DNA of 64,000 nucleotides, taken from positions 1-64,000 of IMG/VR virus record IMGVR_UViG_3300032285_004054. The stretch is one strand, 5' to 3'. A program made the position numbers and the translations under genes. Position 1 is the stretch's first letter. Each line of letters starts with the position of its first letter. The notes below the pieces were generated by a model. It did not search any database and had not been told where the DNA came from. It saw nothing but the letters and a program-made list of their open reading frames with translations. Positions 7,166 to 50,378 of this stretch are shown piece by piece.

Positions 7166-7393
7166 ATGGCTACAATTAAGCATTTTGGCGGACAAGATTA
7201 CAAAGTCCTTCACAAAGGGAAGGAATACGGACCTATGTCTATAGAAGACGCTAGAGAGAAAGTAGCTGAAATTGAAGAAGGCGAACGTAACCTTACACCA
7301 GATGAGGTAGCAGCAGGATTTGCTGAAATGAGAAGAAAGTTAAATGGCGAAAGCTTCAGCCAATTTTTTAAATCACGTCAAGTAGACCTTTAA
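7166..7393 (+). CDS. hypothetical protein
   Basis: ORF preceded by ATAAGTA; convergent overlap with next gene. Confidence 0.7.
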   Translation: MATIKHFGGQDYKVLHKGKEYGPMSIEDAREKVAEIEEGERNLTPDEVAAGFAEMRRKLNGESFSQFFKSRQVDL

Positions 7394-7757
7394 AGCTGTC
7401 TCTTGTTTCAGGAGAAAGCATCTTCTCAAGAAAAGATTGCGCAGTTATATTCTGAACAGGTGATAGAGCTTCATTTGTAGCTTTAAATCTATTAAAGATA
7501 GCCCAGAGTATATCATCATATGAACCGTATGTACCATCTTTAAATACCATTTGTAGAACATTGTCTTCTTTCTTTAAAGAATCTTCGTAATCCGAATGTA
7601 CAGCATCTTTAAAGTTACACTTAGGTTGATTACTATAATGTAACGCTAAAACAATCTTATGATAGAATAGAGCTTTAACTTTAACATCGCCATACTTGTC
7701 TTTGTCAAGTGATACATCATCATCAAATGTAATAGTTAATAGGATAGGGTCTTTCAT
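7368..7757 (-). CDS. C-terminal-tag family protein 5
   Basis: Ends LSPETRDSFKGLLDVI. Confidence 0.8.
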   Translation of the reverse strand: MKDPILLTITFDDDVSLDKDKYGDVKVKALFYHKIVLALHYSNQPKCNFKDAVHSDYEDSLKKEDNVLQMVFKDGTYGSYDDILWAIFNRFKATNEALSPVQNITAQSFLEKMLSPETRDSFKGLLDVI

Positions 7758-8392
7758 TAGTCAAGTACGTCTAGTAAACCTCCAAATGCTTTAGCAGTAG
7801 GATCACTTAATTCATCTTTATAACTTTTATCAGTCATAGGGTAGATGTATCTAAAATTATCTGTTTTACCATTAGGGAACAATGTATGGTTCCAGCTTGT
7901 CTTCTTTTGTATGTCAACTGGGAAGCTATTTATGTTAAAATGCCTTGTATGAATAGGTTCAAAGAAGTATAGAGCATCATGATAGTTTATAAAGTTACCA
8001 CCTGTAAAGTATTCAATGTTCGTTTCAAGATCTTTTACTACAGCTAGGAAAGCTACTGTTGGTACTTTTGTTTTTTCAATACCTCTGACCTTAACAATAG
8101 GCCATAATTTTAATTGTAAGAACTTCCAATCATGTCTATAGATAGGAGTATTCTTATCGTAATCTTCGTAATCCTTATGTTTTGGATCTCTCATACGTAC
8201 CTGCTCAAATTGCAGCTGTGTAACTAATCTATAGATTAGTACTGCTTTTAATGCATCTAAAGATTTATGTTCAGTAAACGGCTTAAACGCTTGTTCGGTA
8301 TCTGATGACCAAACAGCAATACTCATAATACTATCAATTGTGCCTTGATAGTAATGACTCTTAATATCGTAATTTATATTGTTAGAGGACAT
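7757..8392 (-). CDS. C-terminal-tag family protein 4
   Basis: Ends LSDPTAKAFGGLLDVLD. Confidence 0.8.
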   Translation of the reverse strand: MSSNNINYDIKSHYYQGTIDSIMSIAVWSSDTEQAFKPFTEHKSLDALKAVLIYRLVTQLQFEQVRMRDPKHKDYEDYDKNTPIYRHDWKFLQLKLWPIVKVRGIEKTKVPTVAFLAVVKDLETNIEYFTGGNFINYHDALYFFEPIHTRHFNINSFPVDIQKKTSWNHTLFPNGKTDNFRYIYPMTDKSYKDELSDPTAKAFGGLLDVLD

Positions 8393-8780
8393 CTAATAAA
8401 CCTCCAAATGTTTCTTCAGTATCTTTTGAAAGAGACTTCTTTAGTATATAATTCTCTCTTTTTGCTAACGGCCACTCTTTATCGAGATATTCTTCAATTA
8501 TCTCTCTTTCTTCATAGTCTATAGGTTTACCTAGAACTCTATTACCGAACTCATCTTTTTCTAAATTGTAACAGCCTCCGTCATATCTGCGACCTCTGTC
8601 ATCTTCATCTTTCCATATGACTATATCTCGTTTACCGTCTAAGATTAGATACCAAGCCCAGTGCATGTTCTCAGGACCATCGCGATGCTTTTTAAGATCA
8701 ACAAATTCTATAGTAATACCAACAACATGATTGCCGCCATAACGATCTGTTGGGTATGTTGTTTTGTAAATATTACTCAT
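8382..8780 (-). CDS. C-terminal-tag family protein 3
   Basis: Ends LSKDTEETFGGLLDVL. Confidence 0.8.
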   Translation of the reverse strand: MSNIYKTTYPTDRYGGNHVVGITIEFVDLKKHRDGPENMHWAWYLILDGKRDIVIWKDEDDRGRRYDGGCYNLEKDEFGNRVLGKPIDYEEREIIEEYLDKEWPLAKRENYILKKSLSKDTEETFGGLLDVL

Positions 8781-9142
8781 ATAACGTCAAGTAGTCCTCC
8801 AAATGAATCTTTAGTTTTCTTAGACAGATGTTTCTCTATTTTATATTTTTCAATAGCTTTGTCAATTTGAGAGGATAATTCATCCAATGCACCAATATAA
8901 CCATCACCCTCATCTTTCATTCCTAAAACGTTTCTCCATTCTCCGTTTTGATATTTTGAATCAGTAGTCCAAGGCCATTCTCTAGTTTTGTTCCAAGTCA
9001 TCTTCAATCCATCAACTACAATATCGACAAGCATATCATCGGAGTAAGCCTGATTAGGTGAGTCTTCGTTGTAGTAGACATCACTCTTAATTTGTATATC
9101 GTACACTCTTTCTTTTGATTCAAAGAATTTCTTAAATGACAT
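8777..9142 (-). CDS. C-terminal-tag family protein 2 with capsid-targeting-like leader
   Basis: Starts MSFKKFFESK; ends LSKKTKDSFGGLLDVI. Confidence 0.8.
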   Translation of the reverse strand: MSFKKFFESKERVYDIQIKSDVYYNEDSPNQAYSDDMLVDIVVDGLKMTWNKTREWPWTTDSKYQNGEWRNVLGMKDEGDGYIGALDELSSQIDKAIEKYKIEKHLSKKTKDSFGGLLDVI

Positions 9143-9572
9143 CGATTAAACCTCCAAATGAATTTCTTGTATCTTTTGAGAGTGTTCTCTTTAGGTATTC
9201 ACTCTCTGGTTCTATTTTATAATCTTCATCTACTAACCCGTTCATTAAGTCTCTGTACTCTTCAGGAGCTACAAAGCGGGTAATCATATTCATAAATGTA
9301 GTGCTATCGCTTTTGCTGTCAAGCTTTATTTTTATAATCATTTTTCCATTGCCTATCTCATCCATGTCTATATTATTCACAACATCAATTCCTTTGATAT
9401 TATTACCGTAACCCTCCGGACCAGATCTAACAATATACTCAAAACGCTCAAATATATCTAGATTTGTTTTCTTTTGCCTCTCAGCTTCTTCTTCATTGAT
9501 ATACAATGTAACATAAACAACAGAGTCTAAAGACTCCGTCAGTAGAAGTTTCAATGCATGATCAAGATTCAT
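9132..9572 (-). CDS. C-terminal-tag family protein 1
   Basis: Starts MNLDHALKLLLTES; ends LSKDTRNSFGGLIDVI. Confidence 0.8.
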   Translation of the reverse strand: MNLDHALKLLLTESLDSVVYVTLYINEEEAERQKKTNLDIFERFEYIVRSGPEGYGNNIKGIDVVNNIDMDEIGNGKMIIKIKLDSKSDSTTFMNMITRFVAPEEYRDLMNGLVDEDYKIEPESEYLKRTLSKDTRNSFGGLIDVI

Positions 9573-37944: not shown

Positions 37945-39933
37945 TTATAAAATACCTAAAAGGTCTTCAAAAGATCCTTTTGTTTCGTCAGACATATTAT
38001 CTAGTATGTCTAAGTCTTCTAACTCTTTCTTTATCTTTTCGTCTGAATCAAACTTAGTACTATCCCCGTCATATTTTAATCCTTCTTGACGTGCAATGCC
38101 TCTCAGTGTTGTAAGAGGGTTATTACTAAAATCATAATAAACACGATATGATTTATCATTATTGAGAAGTTTTTTAGGAGAACCTACAAGACTGGAGAGT
38201 TGATTGTTAGCTATATCTATCATCGAACCGCCTATCTCTTCTGGTAACCCTTCTAAAGATCTTAAATGGTTATTTGTTAAAGCTATATTACCGCCAATTG
38301 TACTTGGTGCACCTTTTACGCTTGTTAATGATTTACACTTTCTTACTACTAGATCACCTGTAATTGTTGATGGACAACCTTCTAGGCTTTGTAAACTAAT
38401 ACAATCATCAATATATATACCAGGTATAGTAGCAGGTAGACCTTTTAAACTTGCAAGGTTTTTACAGTTACCAATAATATATTTTGTATCATTCCTGCCA
38501 CGTACTCTAATTTCTTGAGTTATACCTGTTAAGTCAAATATACCTAAATTGTCTAGTCGTACGCTACCTAAACAAGACTGAGGTAAACCTTCTAAACTTT
38601 TTAATCTCATGCAATCAGCTATAAAAATACTACCTTTAACAGGAACAGAAGCTCCTTTTAAATCTGTTATCTTTAAATTTCTTAATTCAAGTCTATGAGT
38701 ACTATAAGCACTATCAGGTTCTGCTTCAGCACAAGTTGCAGGCATTCCTTTTAAGCTAGTTATATTTGTTTCTTTACCGTCTATATCTATAGTACCGGTA
38801 ACAGCCATAGGTAAGAACGATAAATCATTTAATTGTTGAAAAGGTGTTTGTGTAACAATTTTAGAATTTTCTCTATAGCCATCTTTAGCATCATTAACAT
38901 CAAAAATAAAACTACCATCAACAATATAATTTTTAAACGAATACGGATTACTAAGTCCTACTTCAAAGTATCTTACATCACCTTTAATAACTTTATTACC
39001 TCTTTCTTCAACTACACGGAAGACATTTTCAATTAGATACTCATCTGTAACTTTTGTTCTATTTATTTTTGTATGTTGATTATACGAAGCGTATACTTTT
39101 AACATCGTATCTTTTACTTTAGCGATACTTTGTTTTGTTACACCTAAATCTTCTGGAGCAAATAGTTCATCAGTTCTATTAACAACCGGAAAACGTATTA
39201 CATATTTTATAGGTACTAAAGATTCTAAAAGATAAGGTGTATTTGTATCTCCGTAATCTCCAATATATCTAGTAATTTTTAAAGTACCTTTTGGTTTAAG
39301 AGTCTTTTCAGGTAACCTATTTCTTCTCATGAAGACTAGCTTACCTGGCAGTATAGGTTCAAACCCAGTTTTATTCTTAATGCTATCGTCTATTGTGTAA
39401 TCTTTTGTAGCTAGAATTATATTAACCCATTGACCGTTTTTAGCTTTTACTTCTAAAGGTTGATCAAGCCATTTAAAACCTATAATAGGGTTTGTTATAA
39501 CCTGTTTAACAGCTTCTTCTATATCAGGTTTAGATTCATAGTCAGTAGGTACGTTAGCATTATTAGCTGCTTGTTTGAATCCATAATCATGTGGATCAAT
39601 ATCTACTGTAGGATCGGTATACTTCTTAGCTACTTGTAAGTCTTTAAAAGGACCGAAGATGAATTGACTATGAATAGGTACAACAGCTCCATCTCCGAAC
39701 TTAATTGCAAACTTGGAATAAGCTCCTGGTACATTTTTATAACCTACAACTTCACCTACTTGGTTAAGATAGGGAAGAGCTTTCTTAGAGTGATAAGATA
39801 GATACCCCATTCCAGGAGCATCTCTAACGACAACTATATTACCGTTATTAAACTTAGCACGAGGAGGAGGCGCGATGTAATCATCGACCTTAAAAACCGG
39901 TACTGCTTCTTCGATGTACTCCTTAAAGGACAT
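37945..39933 (-). CDS. LRR-like repeat protein with capsid-targeting-like leader and C-terminal tag
   Basis: MSFKEYIEEA; L.SL.G.P..I.G repeats; ends MSDETKGSFEDLLGIL. Confidence 0.85.
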   Translation of the reverse strand: MSFKEYIEEAVPVFKVDDYIAPPPRAKFNNGNIVVVRDAPGMGYLSYHSKKALPYLNQVGEVVGYKNVPGAYSKFAIKFGDGAVVPIHSQFIFGPFKDLQVAKKYTDPTVDIDPHDYGFKQAANNANVPTDYESKPDIEEAVKQVITNPIIGFKWLDQPLEVKAKNGQWVNIILATKDYTIDDSIKNKTGFEPILPGKLVFMRRNRLPEKTLKPKGTLKITRYIGDYGDTNTPYLLESLVPIKYVIRFPVVNRTDELFAPEDLGVTKQSIAKVKDTMLKVYASYNQHTKINRTKVTDEYLIENVFRVVEERGNKVIKGDVRYFEVGLSNPYSFKNYIVDGSFIFDVNDAKDGYRENSKIVTQTPFQQLNDLSFLPMAVTGTIDIDGKETNITSLKGMPATCAEAEPDSAYSTHRLELRNLKITDLKGASVPVKGSIFIADCMRLKSLEGLPQSCLGSVRLDNLGIFDLTGITQEIRVRGRNDTKYIIGNCKNLASLKGLPATIPGIYIDDCISLQSLEGCPSTITGDLVVRKCKSLTSVKGAPSTIGGNIALTNNHLRSLEGLPEEIGGSMIDIANNQLSSLVGSPKKLLNNDKSYRVYYDFSNNPLTTLRGIARQEGLKYDGDSTKFDSDEKIKKELEDLDILDNMSDETKGSFEDLLGIL

Positions 39934-39945
39934 ACATTATTTAGC

Positions 39946-43820: not shown

Positions 43821-43895
43821 TGGAGCATCGGGTGAGAATCGAACTCACTATAAAGGGTTTTGCAGACCCTTGCCTGGCCAGTTAGCTTCCGATGC
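43821..43895 (-). tRNA. tRNA-Cys(GCA)
   Basis: Cloverleaf: GCATCGG/CCGATGC-U-CCA, anticodon arm AGGGT-CTGCAAA-ACCCT, TTCGA loop. Confidence 0.92.
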
Positions 43896-44039: not shown

Positions 44040-44130
44040 TGGAGGAAGCGGAGGGATTCGAACCCTCGGAGGCGATAAAACCTCTGCAGTTTAGTAAACT
44101 GCTGCAATAGGCCAGCTCTGCCACACTTCC
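44040..44130 (-). tRNA. tRNA-Ser(ACT), long variable arm
   Basis: GGAAGTG/CGCTTCC-U-CCA; anticodon arm GCAGT-TTACTAA-ACTGC; variable stem GAGG/CCTC. Confidence 0.85.
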
Positions 44131-46289: not shown

Positions 46290-46373
46290 TGGAGCCTGAG
46301 GTGAGATTCGAACTCACGGAGCTTGCGCGTCGGTTTACAAAACCGATCCTATTGGCCACTAAGGGACTCAGGC
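46290..46373 (-). tRNA. tRNA-Thr(TGT) with extended variable arm
   Basis: GCCTGAG/CTCAGGC-U-CCA; TCGGT-TTTGTAA-ACCGA; 12-nt variable region; TTGACT-17-TAATAT promoter upstream. Confidence 0.88.
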
Positions 46374-49177: not shown

Positions 49178-50137
49178 CTAGATTATATCTATTAACCCCT
49201 TAAAAGTATTTTTTGTCTTCGGTGTTAATTTGTTAATAATGGACTTCTTTAGAACATATCTCTTCATAGGTTCTTTATAAGTGTAATGTTTAGCAAAGTA
49301 TTTACAGAAGTCATCCTCTGAATAATCTCTTATTTGTCCTTTTTCTTTTTCTATTTTTAAAACGTTTAACGAGTTATTATATACATCATCTAAAAGCTTC
49401 TTATCTGTCTGCATATTATCTAGTATTCGATCCCAGACATCAAAATTGTCTTCGTCATCGTCTTCTTTGTAATCGTCAATCATACATACTATAGCATCTT
49501 CTATAGCTAGCTTAAACACTGCATCGCTTACAGAATTTTCTACAAGAATTGAACCGACTATACTGTTAAAGCTTTCTTTCATAGGTATCTTGCTAAACTC
49601 TTGATCTAGATAATTACTTATTTCTTCATCTGATTTAAAAAGACTAGATTGTAATCTAATAGCTATACCACCTTTATTGTTCCAAGCATCTACATAAGGA
49701 GGGAAATCATCGATAAGAACATTCGGTGTACCATCTTCGTTTATAGCGTAAATTGATTTGTTTTGAGGATACTCAACACCTTTAAAATACTTTCCGTACT
49801 TCGGTATAATATGCTTCTTAATCCATTCACTTTTTCCCTTCTTGCATTCTTCTATATCAATACTCGCAGGATGAGAACAAATCTTAAAAGAACCAAACTT
49901 CTCTATAACTTTTCTTATTAAAGCGTCATTAGTAGGGTATGGTTCAAGGTTTGCAAATACCTCGTAAACATCACCTAGATGATTGTGAAACTCTTGTTTA
50001 TCTTTCCAGATCTTTCTAGCTTCTTGCTTCTCTTCTGGTGTAATATCTTTATAATCTTTATGATATAACTTATGCGCTATTGTATCGAACAAGTTTGCAA
50101 GCAAACCGTCCATATCAAGATAGCAAATAGGGTTCAT
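49178..50137 (-). CDS. HAD 5'(3')-nucleotidase-like domain fused to tagged C-terminal domain
   Basis: YLDMDGLLA, K..W, K..YA, LIDD, W...GG; ends LTPKTKNTFKGLIDII. Confidence 0.85.
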   Translation of the reverse strand: MNPICYLDMDGLLANLFDTIAHKLYHKDYKDITPEEKQEARKIWKDKQEFHNHLGDVYEVFANLEPYPTNDALIRKVIEKFGSFKICSHPASIDIEECKKGKSEWIKKHIIPKYGKYFKGVEYPQNKSIYAINEDGTPNVLIDDFPPYVDAWNNKGGIAIRLQSSLFKSDEEISNYLDQEFSKIPMKESFNSIVGSILVENSVSDAVFKLAIEDAIVCMIDDYKEDDDEDNFDVWDRILDNMQTDKKLLDDVYNNSLNVLKIEKEKGQIRDYSEDDFCKYFAKHYTYKEPMKRYVLKKSIINKLTPKTKNTFKGLIDII

Positions 50138-50138
50138 A

Positions 50139-50378
50139 TTAAGCACTAAGAGGTGCTACTATAACATGATAACGATAAAGGAAATAACCTTTAAAGTGTC
50201 TGTTAACGAACTGGCTCTTAGCACTTATTATTATGTGTTCGTTTGAGAGTTTATCAAGCTGATGTTGTAGATGCTTTTCTGCTTCCTCAGACGTACTATG
50301 AAAACCTGACCAGGTAATTTTGTTTAAATCGTATGTCGGGGCAACGTTAGTACCTGTGCAGGGAACAATGAGTGTCAT
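50139..50378 (-). CDS. hypothetical protein
   Basis: TAAATA upstream. Confidence 0.6.
   Translation of the reverse strand: MTLIVPCTGTNVAPTYDLNKITWSGFHSTSEEAEKHLQHQLDKLSNEHIIISAKSQFVNRHFKGYFLYRYHVIVAPLSA

What the first reader, a model, noticed from the sequence alone, without database searches (positions are those of the whole stretch)
7757..9160. The tag's FGG codons double as a Shine-Dalgarno and a shared DNA junction
The four tag copies with a coupled downstream gene all contain the same 10-mer CATTTGGAGG (+ strand CCTCCAAATG at 7779, 8401, 8796, 9151). The three copies without a coupled neighbour read FKG or FED. In two cases GGAGGT lies 7 nt before the next ATG, which is embedded in the tag's own GAT-GTC (Asp-Val) codons; spacing is 14 and 20 nt in the other two. 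In a genome that mostly lacks SD sites, the tag seems to supply initiation for the next cassette, making the array self-extending. The 10-mer could also be recombination microhomology for cassette exchange.
Basis: partly seen in the sequence, partly recalled or inferred. Interest (0 to 1): 0.68.

Follow-up and report, generated by a model that had tools for sequence, protein, structure and literature searches.

The report
Shine-Dalgarno-like codons inside cassette tags
In a 218-kb T4-like phage that otherwise has no ribosome-binding sites, the conserved tail of each small tandem "cassette" protein is written in codons that spell a ribosome-binding-like GGAGG 8 nt before the next cassette's start codon, and this start lies inside the tail; the pattern recurs in related phages and could be tested with ribosomes that normally ignore such sites.

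Summary
The genome holds at least 25 copies of a ~34-aa C-terminal module (…L-S-x-x-T-x-x-[ST]-F-x-x-L-[LI]-D-x-[LI]*). These sit in two tandem arrays, one in-frame triple fusion, and dispersed genes. All 10 junctions where the next gene starts at an ATG embedded in the tag's Asp-Val codons (11-nt overlap) carry GGAGG 8 nt upstream.

The first Gly codon is GGA in 12/12 overlapped F-G-G tags (background 22-34%). Uncoupled tags use GGT or other residues.

In 99 unique tags from three phage lineages, an SD-like 4-mer is present at:
- 39/52 embedded-start junctions
- 6/15 ATGA-type overlaps
- 6/30 uncoupled tags (p≈1e-6)

The motif arises through different amino acids: GGA-G, GAG-G and AAG-GAG. 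So the selection acts on nucleotides. The amino-acid rule "FGG = coupled" holds only in this phage, and about a quarter of embedded starts lack the motif.

Outside the arrays the genome is SD-free (0/53 leading genes, 4/60 overlapped pairs). This matches the Bacteroidetes pattern, where ribosomes are SD-blind. How the motif would be read is therefore open. The phage's own bS21 lacks the anti-SD-masking tyrosine, which suggests one route.

For the recombination idea there is only indirect support.

The parts
9132..9572 (-). Cassette 1 of the window array (146 aa). First gene of the operon. Tag ...SFGGLIDVI*.
   Evidence: tag HMM E=4e-15
8777..9142 (-). Cassette 2 (121 aa). Starts at an ATG embedded in cassette 1's GAT-GTC codons (11-nt overlap). 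N-terminus MSFKKFFESK. Tag ...SFGGLLDVI*.
   Evidence: orthologue P0033 in another phage
8382..8780 (-). Cassette 3 (132 aa), with an ATGA-type 4-nt overlap with cassette 2. Body subfamily F is shared with relatives. Tag ...TFGGLLDVL*.
7757..8392 (-). Cassette 4 (211 aa). Starts at an ATG embedded in cassette 3's GAT-GTC (11-nt overlap). Tag ...AFGGLLDVLD*.
7368..7757 (-). Cassette 5 (129 aa), the last in the array, with a 1-nt overlap (TAATG). Its tag reads F-K-G (TTT AAA GGT), its Asp codon is GAC (no embedded ATG), and no gene follows on this strand.
9151..9155 (-). GGAGG (Gly-Gly codons GGA GGT), 8 nt upstream of the ATG at 9142-9140.
8401..8405 (-). GGAGG (GGA GGT), 8 nt upstream of the ATG at 8392-8390.
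8796..8800 (-). GGAGG (GGA GGA), 15 nt upstream of the ATG at 8780-8778. Too far for a canonical SD.
7779..7783 (-). GGAGG (GGA GGT), 21 nt upstream of the ATG at 7757-7755. Too far for a canonical SD.
37945..39936 (-). Dispersed 662/663-aa repeat-rich protein with the same N-terminal motif (MSFKEYIEEA) and C-terminal module. Its tag reads F-E-D (TTT GAA GAC). The next gene is 25 nt away and has no SD-like motif.
   Evidence: no Pfam/PHROG family
49178..50155 (-). Dispersed 5'-deoxyribonucleotidase-like protein (NT5C, residues 8-120) with the C-terminal module. Its tag reads F-K-G (TTT AAG GGG). The next gene is 35 nt away.

Best explanation
**What it is.** The window array is one of several operons of small, hypervariable 'cassette' proteins. 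All end in a conserved ~34-aa module: a helix, then L-S-x-x-T-x-x-[ST]-F-x-x-L-[LI]-D-x-[LI]. The module is first of all a protein feature. It is kept on dispersed, uncoupled and even internal (fused) copies.

**The overlaid signal.** Where a further cassette follows, the last 16 codons of the module also serve as the translation initiation region of the next gene.
- The next ATG sits in the Asp-Val (or Asp-Glu) codons, 8 nt before the stop.
- The next gene's frame is closed by a stop immediately before that ATG.
- The two codons after Phe are chosen so that positions -13 to -8 read GGAGG, GGAG, GAGG or AGGAG.

**Most likely mechanism (inferred, not shown).** A ribosome finishing cassette n is held at, or recruited to, the embedded ATG of cassette n+1 by pairing between this purine motif and the CCUCC of 16S rRNA. 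This would be termination-reinitiation helped by an intragenic SD.

**Why the pairing step is uncertain.** The rest of the genome behaves as if the host ribosome ignores SDs. The pairing probably needs ribosomes whose anti-SD is exposed. This step is speculative.
For: **Shown**
1. Geometry: 10/10 embedded-start junctions in this genome have GGAGG with an 8-nt spacer.
2. Codon choice in this genome: the first Gly is GGA in 12/12 overlapped F-G-G tags. Genome-wide GGA is 22%, or 34% before another Gly codon (binomial 2e-6). Neighbouring synonymous sites vary: TTT/TTC, GGT/GGA/GGG, TTA/CTA.
3. Internal controls: the uncoupled F-G-G of the triple fusion uses GGT GGA. The uncoupled F-G-S uses GGT. 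Both arrays' last genes read F-K-G or F-G-D.
4. Replication in relatives: over 99 unique tags, an SD-like 4-mer occurs in 39/52 embedded-start junctions, 6/15 4/1-nt overlaps, 6/30 uncoupled tags and 0/2 internal tags (Fisher 1e-6). GGA is used in 29/30 embedded-start junctions against 4/10 uncoupled tags.
5. Expectation given the amino acids: 12.1 SD-like tags expected and 30 seen in the relatives' overlapped tags; 2.3 expected and 4 seen in their non-overlapped tags.
6. Convergence: the motif is made through Gly (GGA-G, A at -11), Glu (GAG-G, G at -11; 6/7 against 25% background) and Lys-Glu (AAG GAG). What is conserved is therefore complementarity to CCUCC, not a fixed base or residue.
7. 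The embedded ATG is avoided when unused: Asp is GAC in 13/20 such tags against 21-23% background (p=7e-5).
8. There is no stable RNA fold at the junctions (mean z +0.3).

**From the literature**
- Intragenic SDs in the upstream gene's 3' end commonly assist termination-reinitiation at overlapping pairs, even in lineages that do not use SDs de novo (PMC6728339).
Against: 1. The phage otherwise has no SDs: 0/53 leading genes, 4/60 non-array overlapped pairs and 5/77 short-gap pairs. The relatives show 2/48 outside their arrays. This is the Bacteroidetes pattern, where SDs are used neither de novo nor for reinitiation (PMC6728339). There the anti-SD is sequestered (PMC7797042), also during elongation (PMC10798248).
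2. 13/52 embedded starts have no motif (F-N-D and similar). The sister phage couples most cassettes through ATGA overlaps without one. The motif is therefore dispensable.
3. Two of the four window junctions keep GGAGG at useless spacing (15 and 21 nt).
4. Tags within an array are related by duplication, and junctions share exact stretches of up to 31 nt. The counts are therefore not independent, and gene conversion could inflate them.
5. There are no expression or translation data: no RNA run holds the locus.
6. The host, and hence its 16S 3' end, is not identified.
Confidence: 0.5

Rival explanations
1. No RNA-level function. The GGAGG is a by-product of a conserved F-G-G/F-G-D peptide plus shared ancestry or concerted evolution (gene conversion) of tandem junctions. 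Terminal and dispersed copies are simply older and more diverged.
For: Cassettes are tandem paralogues. Junction pairs share exact matches of median 11 nt and up to 31 nt, including 30 nt between the two arrays. GGAGG is also retained at two junctions where the spacing is useless. The host-type translation signals elsewhere in the genome lack SDs.
Against: Other synonymous sites in the same tags are scrambled while GGA is fixed. The bias recurs in three diverged lineages and through different amino acids: GGA-G, GAG-G and AAG-GAG. Uncoupled Gly-bearing tags use GGT/GGC at background rates, 4/10 GGA. Observed counts far exceed the amino-acid-conditioned expectation only in overlapped tags.
Confidence: 0.2
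2. The conserved junction is chiefly a DNA substrate. The shared 10-30-nt stretch lets cassettes recombine, duplicate and move, so arrays grow and reshuffle. The SD-likeness is incidental.
For: At least twelve body subfamilies (A-L) are shared among phages, but their order and copy number differ completely between arrays. All boundaries fall at the tag/start junction. Exact junction matches reach 31 nt. In-frame fusions of three cassettes exist, and two of their units are paralogues. T4-type phages are known to shuffle ORFs through short conserved flanking elements, the PeSLs (PMC2839356, PMC4122927).
Against: No recombinant was observed: every close relative found is 100% identical over the arrays. 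The median exact match is only 11 nt. Recombination does not explain why SD-like codons track the embedded ATG, or why GAC replaces GAT when the ATG is unused. This rival is not exclusive with the best explanation.
Confidence: 0.25
3. The selected feature is a position-specific upstream adenine (A at -11), of the kind SD-independent Bacteroidia-type initiation uses, and not complementarity to the anti-SD.
For: A is most frequent at -11 among all upstream positions in this genome (0.54). GGA puts an A exactly at -11.
Against: In F-E-D and F-K-E tags the preferred synonymous codon puts G, not A, at -11: GAG 6/7 against 25% background, and AAG 4/6. F-N-D tags have C or T there. The common denominator is a 4-5-nt match to GGAGG.
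Confidence: 0.05
4. GGAG is a cleavage site for a RegB-like endoribonuclease that processes or inactivates the polycistronic cassette mRNA, as in T4 (knowledge of T4 RegB is from memory).
For: The phage is T4-like. GGAG is the commonest form of the motif in the relatives.
Against: No RegB homologue was detected (PF10715, E<=1). GAGG- and AGGA-type variants lack GGAG. The motif's fixed distance to the embedded ATG is not required by a nuclease site.
Confidence: 0.03

Closest known systems
Intragenic Shine-Dalgarno motifs at overlapping gene pairs (translational coupling by termination-reinitiation; Huber et al. 2019, PMC6728339)
   Same: Co-directional genes overlap. An SD-like motif lies in the 3' coding end of the upstream gene at SD-typical distance from the downstream start. 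Its contribution varies from gene to gene. Some lineages use it only for reinitiation and not de novo.
   Different: The overlap here is 11 nt (ATG inside Asp-Val/Asp-Glu codons) rather than ATGA/TGATG. The motif is written into a conserved protein module repeated 10-15 times per array. It is confined to these arrays, while 60 other overlapped pairs of the same genome lack it. The genome type resembles the one group (Bacteroidetes) reported not to use SDs even for reinitiation.
rpsU (bS21) autoregulation in Flavobacteriia: a lone strong SD read only by ribosomes whose anti-SD is unmasked (PMC9976891, PMC13000453, PMC7797042)
   Same: The background is SD-free, with a small set of genes carrying a strong SD. 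bS21 status of the ribosome decides whether an SD is seen. This phage encodes its own bS21.
   Different: No link between the phage bS21 and the arrays is shown. The host is unidentified. The phage bS21 lacks the Tyr54 equivalent, unlike the 61 phage bS21s described in PMC9723584. The SDs here precede internal overlapped starts, not a leader.
PeSL mobile regulatory cassettes of T4-type phages (PMC2839356, PMC4122927)
   Same: Short conserved sequences flank variable small ORFs in plastic regions of T4-like genomes. They combine an expression signal with a possible recombination substrate.
   Different: PeSLs are intergenic promoter plus stem-loop elements. This junction is coding in two frames, has no stem-loop and no promoter-like excess, and supplies a translational signal rather than a transcriptional one.
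T4 internal proteins with an N-terminal capsid targeting sequence (PMC9026906)
   Same: These are variable small proteins of a T4-like phage. Many share a ~10-residue N-terminal motif with hydrophobic residues followed by Glu (MNFKQLVLEE, MSFKKFFES). A gp21-type prohead protease is present. Similar motifs occur at the N-termini of the protease, the scaffold-position protein and the capsid protein. The N-terminal 10 residues are predicted disordered.
   Different: The comparison rests on pattern only. Neither cleavage nor packaging was tested. Only a subset of cassettes has the motif (one of five in the window). T4 internal proteins have no conserved C-terminal module.

Membership tests
Shine-Dalgarno element | At least 4 contiguous nt complementary to the CCUCC core of the 16S rRNA 3' tail | tested here: met
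   GGAGG in 12/13 overlapped junctions of this genome. GGAG, GAGG, AGGA or GGAGG in 39/52 embedded-start junctions overall. The host 16S sequence itself is unknown, so the canonical core was assumed.
Shine-Dalgarno element | Spacer of about 5-10 nt to the start codon | tested here: inconclusive
   8 nt (GGAGG) or 7-9 nt (4-mers) at all embedded-start junctions. At the 4-nt and 1-nt overlaps, including two of the four window sites, the spacer is 15-21 nt.
Shine-Dalgarno element | Enriched upstream of starts beyond what composition or coding gives | tested here: met
   12 observed against 2.7 expected (own genome) and 30 against 12.1 (relatives), given amino acids and codon usage. No excess at non-overlapped tags.
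Shine-Dalgarno element | The organism's ribosomes use SD-anti-SD pairing for initiation | tested here: not met
   No SD signal at the other genes: 0/53 leading genes, 4/60 overlapped pairs. The relatives show 2/48. Host ribosomes were not examined directly.
Shine-Dalgarno element | Mutation of the motif lowers translation of the downstream gene | not testable with these tools
   Needs a reporter or in-vitro translation. No RNA or ribosome-profiling data exist for this phage.
Translationally coupled overlapping gene pair | Co-directional genes whose stop and start overlap or abut | tested here: met
   Overlaps of 11, 4, 11 and 1 nt in the window. There are 10 further 11-nt overlaps in array 2.
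Translationally coupled overlapping gene pair | Downstream translation depends on upstream translation | not testable with these tools
   Would need premature-stop constructs.
PeSL-type mobile regulatory cassette | Intergenic early promoter plus stem-loop | tested here: not met
   The junction is coding in two frames. Mean folding z is +0.3 for 12 junctions. Promoter-like sites are not above shuffles.
PeSL-type mobile regulatory cassette | Copies flank variable ORFs and coincide with indel/replacement breakpoints between related phages | tested here: inconclusive
   Cassette order and number differ between phages, with boundaries at junctions. The only close relatives are 100% identical, so no breakpoint could be mapped.
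T4-type internal protein (CTS-bearing) | N-terminal ~10-residue targeting peptide ending in hydrophobic-x-Glu | tested here: inconclusive
   The pattern is present in a subset of cassettes and in head proteins. This is pattern resemblance only.
T4-type internal protein (CTS-bearing) | gp21-family prohead protease in the genome | tested here: met
   PF03420, 101 bits, at genome 109779-110228.
T4-type internal protein (CTS-bearing) | Protein is found processed in the virion | not testable with these tools
   Needs virion proteomics.
Bacteroidia-type (anti-SD-sequestering) bS21 | Signature aromatic residue at the Tyr54 position and a weakly basic C-terminal part | tested here: not met
   The phage bS21 aligns Lys57 to Tyr54 (KVRKSKQ against KAIYVKQ / KAIYIQQ). 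There is no aromatic residue between F40 and Y67, and the C-terminus is Lys-rich. The alignment of this low-complexity stretch is uncertain.

The most novel reading that the evidence does not exclude
The cassette junctions would form a private, SD-dependent regulon in an SD-blind host (probably Bacteroidota). The phage's own bS21 lacks the Tyr54 that masks the anti-SD and has a basic, non-Bacteroidia-like C-terminus. It would replace host bS21 and expose the anti-SD, so that only the GGAGG-bearing embedded starts of the cassette arrays gain efficient (re)initiation. The cassettes may be capsid-targeted ejection proteins. If so, the phage would use ribosome remodelling to switch on one class of its genes.
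Probability: 0.12. Interest if true: 0.85.

Novelty: new variant of a known kind. Interest (0 to 1): 0.6.

Why it matters
If the motif works, it is a compact case of dual coding. A conserved protein tail also carries the start codon, the frame-closing stop and the ribosome-binding signal of the next gene. Any cassette ending in the tail can then drive whatever is placed behind it.

It is also the only class of SD-like sites in a phage whose genome, and by inference whose host, does not use SDs. The phage encodes a ribosomal protein bS21 that lacks the residue known to hide the anti-SD in Bacteroidia.

This gives a direct, cheap test of an open question: what phage-encoded bS21 does. Published Flavobacterium johnsoniae reporters and wild-type, Y54A and ΔC ribosomes could be used (PMC9976891).

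If it does not work, the arrays remain a clear example of nucleotide-level constraint that needs another explanation.

Tried and rejected
- **Family scans.** Pfam and PHROGs on the five window cassettes and the 663-aa protein found no family.
- **Sequence searches.** The word-index protein search with the 121-aa cassette found only itself. blastn of the array against the phage collection gave no match.
- **Related loci.** The search for related loci in viral contigs found only an identical copy or nothing. One alignment was too diverse to search. The records behind the metagenome loci are not held, so they could not be scanned for bS21. Their 5-kb flanks hold none.
- **Fold and atlas.** Foldseek of the AF2 model against PDB gave no match with E<=0.001. 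The ESM Atlas gave no usable look-alike.
- **RNA structure at junctions.** Rejected.
- **RegB-type nuclease.** No homologue.
- **RMF homologue** (seen weakly in the sister phage). Absent here.
- **Host identification.**
  - The Bacteroidetes promoter motif TAnnTTTG is not enriched.
  - The 80/80 Bacteroidetes hits to the phage bS21 are biased by the exact-peptide seeding. PDB bS21 scores do not discriminate phyla. The host stays unproven.
- **The phage bS21's own leader.** No strong SD.
- **Frameshift fusion at the junction.** Unlikely, because the downstream frame carries a stop immediately before the embedded ATG (sequences).
- **Expression.** No RNA run holds the locus.
Full report
**1. Observation**

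The window is the first 64 kb of a 218,400-bp viral record with 36% G+C. The 10-mer CCTCCAAATG stands at 7779, 8401, 8796 and 9151 and nowhere else in the window: 4 found, 0.14 expected, and no shuffle reaches 4.

On the minus strand it is the codon string (TC)A TTT GGA GG of four out of five tandem ORFs: 9572-9132, 9142-8777, 8780-8382, 8392-7757 and 7757-7368. All five end in L-S-x-x-T-x-x-[ST]-F-x-G-L-[LI]-D-V-[IL].

So is the statement that the three uncoupled window copies read F-K-G or F-E-D.

**2. Extent of the family**

A profile of the last 34 residues finds at least 25 modules in this genome:
- the window array of 5 cassettes;
- a second array of about 10 cassettes at 195.3-199.0 kb;
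- a 321-aa protein just downstream of that array, which is three cassettes fused in frame, with two internal modules;
- copies at 207-211 kb on both strands;
- dispersed copies on a 663-aa repeat-rich protein and on a 5'-nucleotidase-like protein.

The module is therefore a protein feature in its own right. An AlphaFold model of one subfamily (pLDDT 81) shows a disordered N-terminal decapeptide, an α/β body, a confident helix, and then the tag as a low-confidence terminal helix. It has no fold or family match.

Cassette bodies fall into at least 12 subfamilies that recur in other phages.

**3. The junction codes in two frames**

In 10 junctions of this genome the next gene starts at an ATG formed by G-AT-G of Asp-Val, 8 nt before the stop. 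D-V-I-stop therefore also reads M-S-F-K. In relatives D-E-L-stop also reads M-N-F-K. The downstream frame has a stop directly before that ATG (sequences).

**4. Test of the SD reading in this genome**

- All 12 F-G-G tags with an overlapped neighbour use GGA for the first Gly. Genome-wide GGA is 22%, or 34% before a Gly codon.
- Adjacent synonymous sites vary.
- The uncoupled F-G-G at the end of the triple fusion is GGT GGA, and the uncoupled F-G-S is GGT.
- Both arrays' last genes have lost G-G.
- One ATGA-overlapped tag on the + strand (F-G-D, GGT GAC) has no motif.
- Given the amino acids and codon usage, 2.7 SD-like tags were expected among the 13 overlapped junctions and 12 were seen. Among the 12 non-overlapped tags, 2.5 were expected and 2 seen.

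**5. Test in a larger set**

A profile search of 1.84 billion proteins gave 36 hits. Encoding contigs and a metagenome scan gave arrays of up to 15 cassettes from a 'DEL' clade (L019, L022-L030) and from a 214-kb sister phage (L112-L117).

Three other contigs were 100% identical to this genome and were not counted.

F-G-G is rare, and F-G-D, F-G-E, F-N-D, F-E-D, F-K-E and F-D-D tags all have overlapped neighbours.

At the nucleotide level the association holds over 99 unique tags (Fisher 1e-6):

| Junction class | Tags with an SD-like 4-mer at -13..-8 |
|---|---|
| Embedded start (11-nt overlap) | 39/52 |
| 4/1-nt overlap | 6/15 |
| Uncoupled | 6/30 |
| Internal | 0/2 |

Codon evidence:
- GGA is used in 29/30 embedded-start Gly tags against 4/10 uncoupled ones.
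- GAG is used in 6/7 coupled F-E-D tags against 25% background.
- F-K-E is written AAG GAG.

GGA puts A at -11 while GAG and AAG put G there. The shared property is therefore a match to GGAGG, not a fixed base.

Where the embedded start is not used, Asp is GAC in 13/20 tags against 21-23% background (p=7e-5). This removes the ATG.

**6. What argues against a working SD**

- Outside the arrays the phage has no SD signal: 0/53 leading genes, 4/60 overlapped pairs, 5/77 short-gap pairs and 3/104 others. The relatives show 2/48.
- In a 720-genome survey only Bacteroidetes show under 10% SD at both leading and overlapped genes (PMC6728339).
- Bacteroidia ribosomes are SD-blind because bS21, bS18 and bS6 sequester the anti-SD (PMC7797042), also during elongation (PMC10798248).
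- The motif is dispensable: 13/52 embedded starts lack it, and the sister phage mostly uses ATGA overlaps without it.
- Tags are paralogues, and junctions share up to 31 identical nt. The counts are not independent.
- The host is not identified.
- No RNA data exist.

**7. A possible way out (speculative)**

The phage encodes a bS21 (71 aa; PF01165, 41.7 bits; genome 190.8 kb, about 4.5 kb from array 2). Aligned to Bacteroidales and solved bS21s, Lys57 stands where the signature Tyr54 should be. No aromatic residue lies within nine positions, and the C-terminal part is Lys-rich.

In F. johnsoniae, bS21 Y54A or ΔC ribosomes make 3-5 times more protein from a strong-SD mRNA (PMC9976891). All 61 phage bS21s described earlier keep an aromatic residue there (PMC9723584).

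The sister phage has few SD-like junctions, and its bS21 has Trp/Phe near that position. This is n=2, so it is only a hint.

**8. Recombination and the 'self-extending' idea**

Cassette subfamilies are shared but ordered differently in every array, and fusions and duplications occur at junctions. Junction exact matches have a median of 11 nt and a maximum of 31 nt, with 30 nt shared between the two arrays.

This is compatible with junction-mediated shuffling, as proposed for the PeSLs of T4-type phages (PMC2839356, PMC4122927). No recombinant was seen, and the junction is not PeSL-like.

**9. Rejected rivals**

- RNA structure.
- A RegB-type cleavage site: no homologue, and GAGG variants exist.
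- An upstream adenine at -11 (section 5).
- Frameshift fusion: there is a stop before the ATG.

**10. Verdict**

Whether and how it is read is unproven. It is a new variant of the known intragenic-SD/translational-coupling theme, in an unusual SD-free setting.

Noticed in passing
genome 190766-190903 (-), = L009:1456-1671:- (outside the window): The phage encodes a ribosomal protein bS21 whose aligned Tyr54 position is Lys and whose C-terminus is very basic. This differs from Bacteroidia bS21 and from previously described phage bS21s. Its own leader has no strong SD.
   Followed up: partly
genome ~194213-195178 (-), = P0002, just downstream of array 2: A 321-aa protein made of three cassettes fused in frame. 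The two internal tags read F-S-D, and the terminal F-G-G uses GGT GGA and has no overlapped gene. This shows the 'tag' can be internal.
   Followed up: partly
window 8777-9142, 37945-39936; genome 195589-199008; head genes 106935-110297: Many cassettes share an N-terminal motif (MSFKxFxES / MNFKQLVLEE). It resembles the T4 capsid targeting sequence and gp21 cleavage pattern. Similar motifs open the scaffold-position protein (MNFKEILKDQ), the prohead protease (FLVEE) and the capsid protein (SLVEK). A gp21-family protease is present.
   Followed up: partly
window 43821-43895, 44040-44130, 46290-46373 (-): Three tRNA genes: Cys-GCA, a 91-nt Ser with anticodon ACT, and Thr-TGT.
   Followed up: no
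whole genome, upstream regions: ATAAATA occurs in 34 of 119 intergenic upstream regions, and TATAAATA 8 times against 2.4 expected. This fits a T4-late-type promoter. Bacteroidetes TAnnTTTG is not enriched.
   Followed up: partly
window 7166-7393 (+) against 7368-7757 (-): A 75-aa plus-strand ORF converges on the last cassette and overlaps its tag-coding end by 26 nt.
   Followed up: no
L112:1864-3090 and L116:6892-7170 (sister phage, 213,773-bp ENA scaffold): The sister phage carries an IS605 OrfB/Cas12f-like TnpB gene near its array and a weak ribosome-modulation-factor (RMF) hit near its bS21. Neither was found in this genome; RMF was searched for, TnpB was not.
   Followed up: partly
genome 197404-197940 (-): A 178-aa array member ends in a variant tag (SFKDFLDAL). 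The next cassette follows after an 8-nt gap instead of an overlap. This is the only break in the run of 11-nt overlaps in array 2.
   Followed up: no
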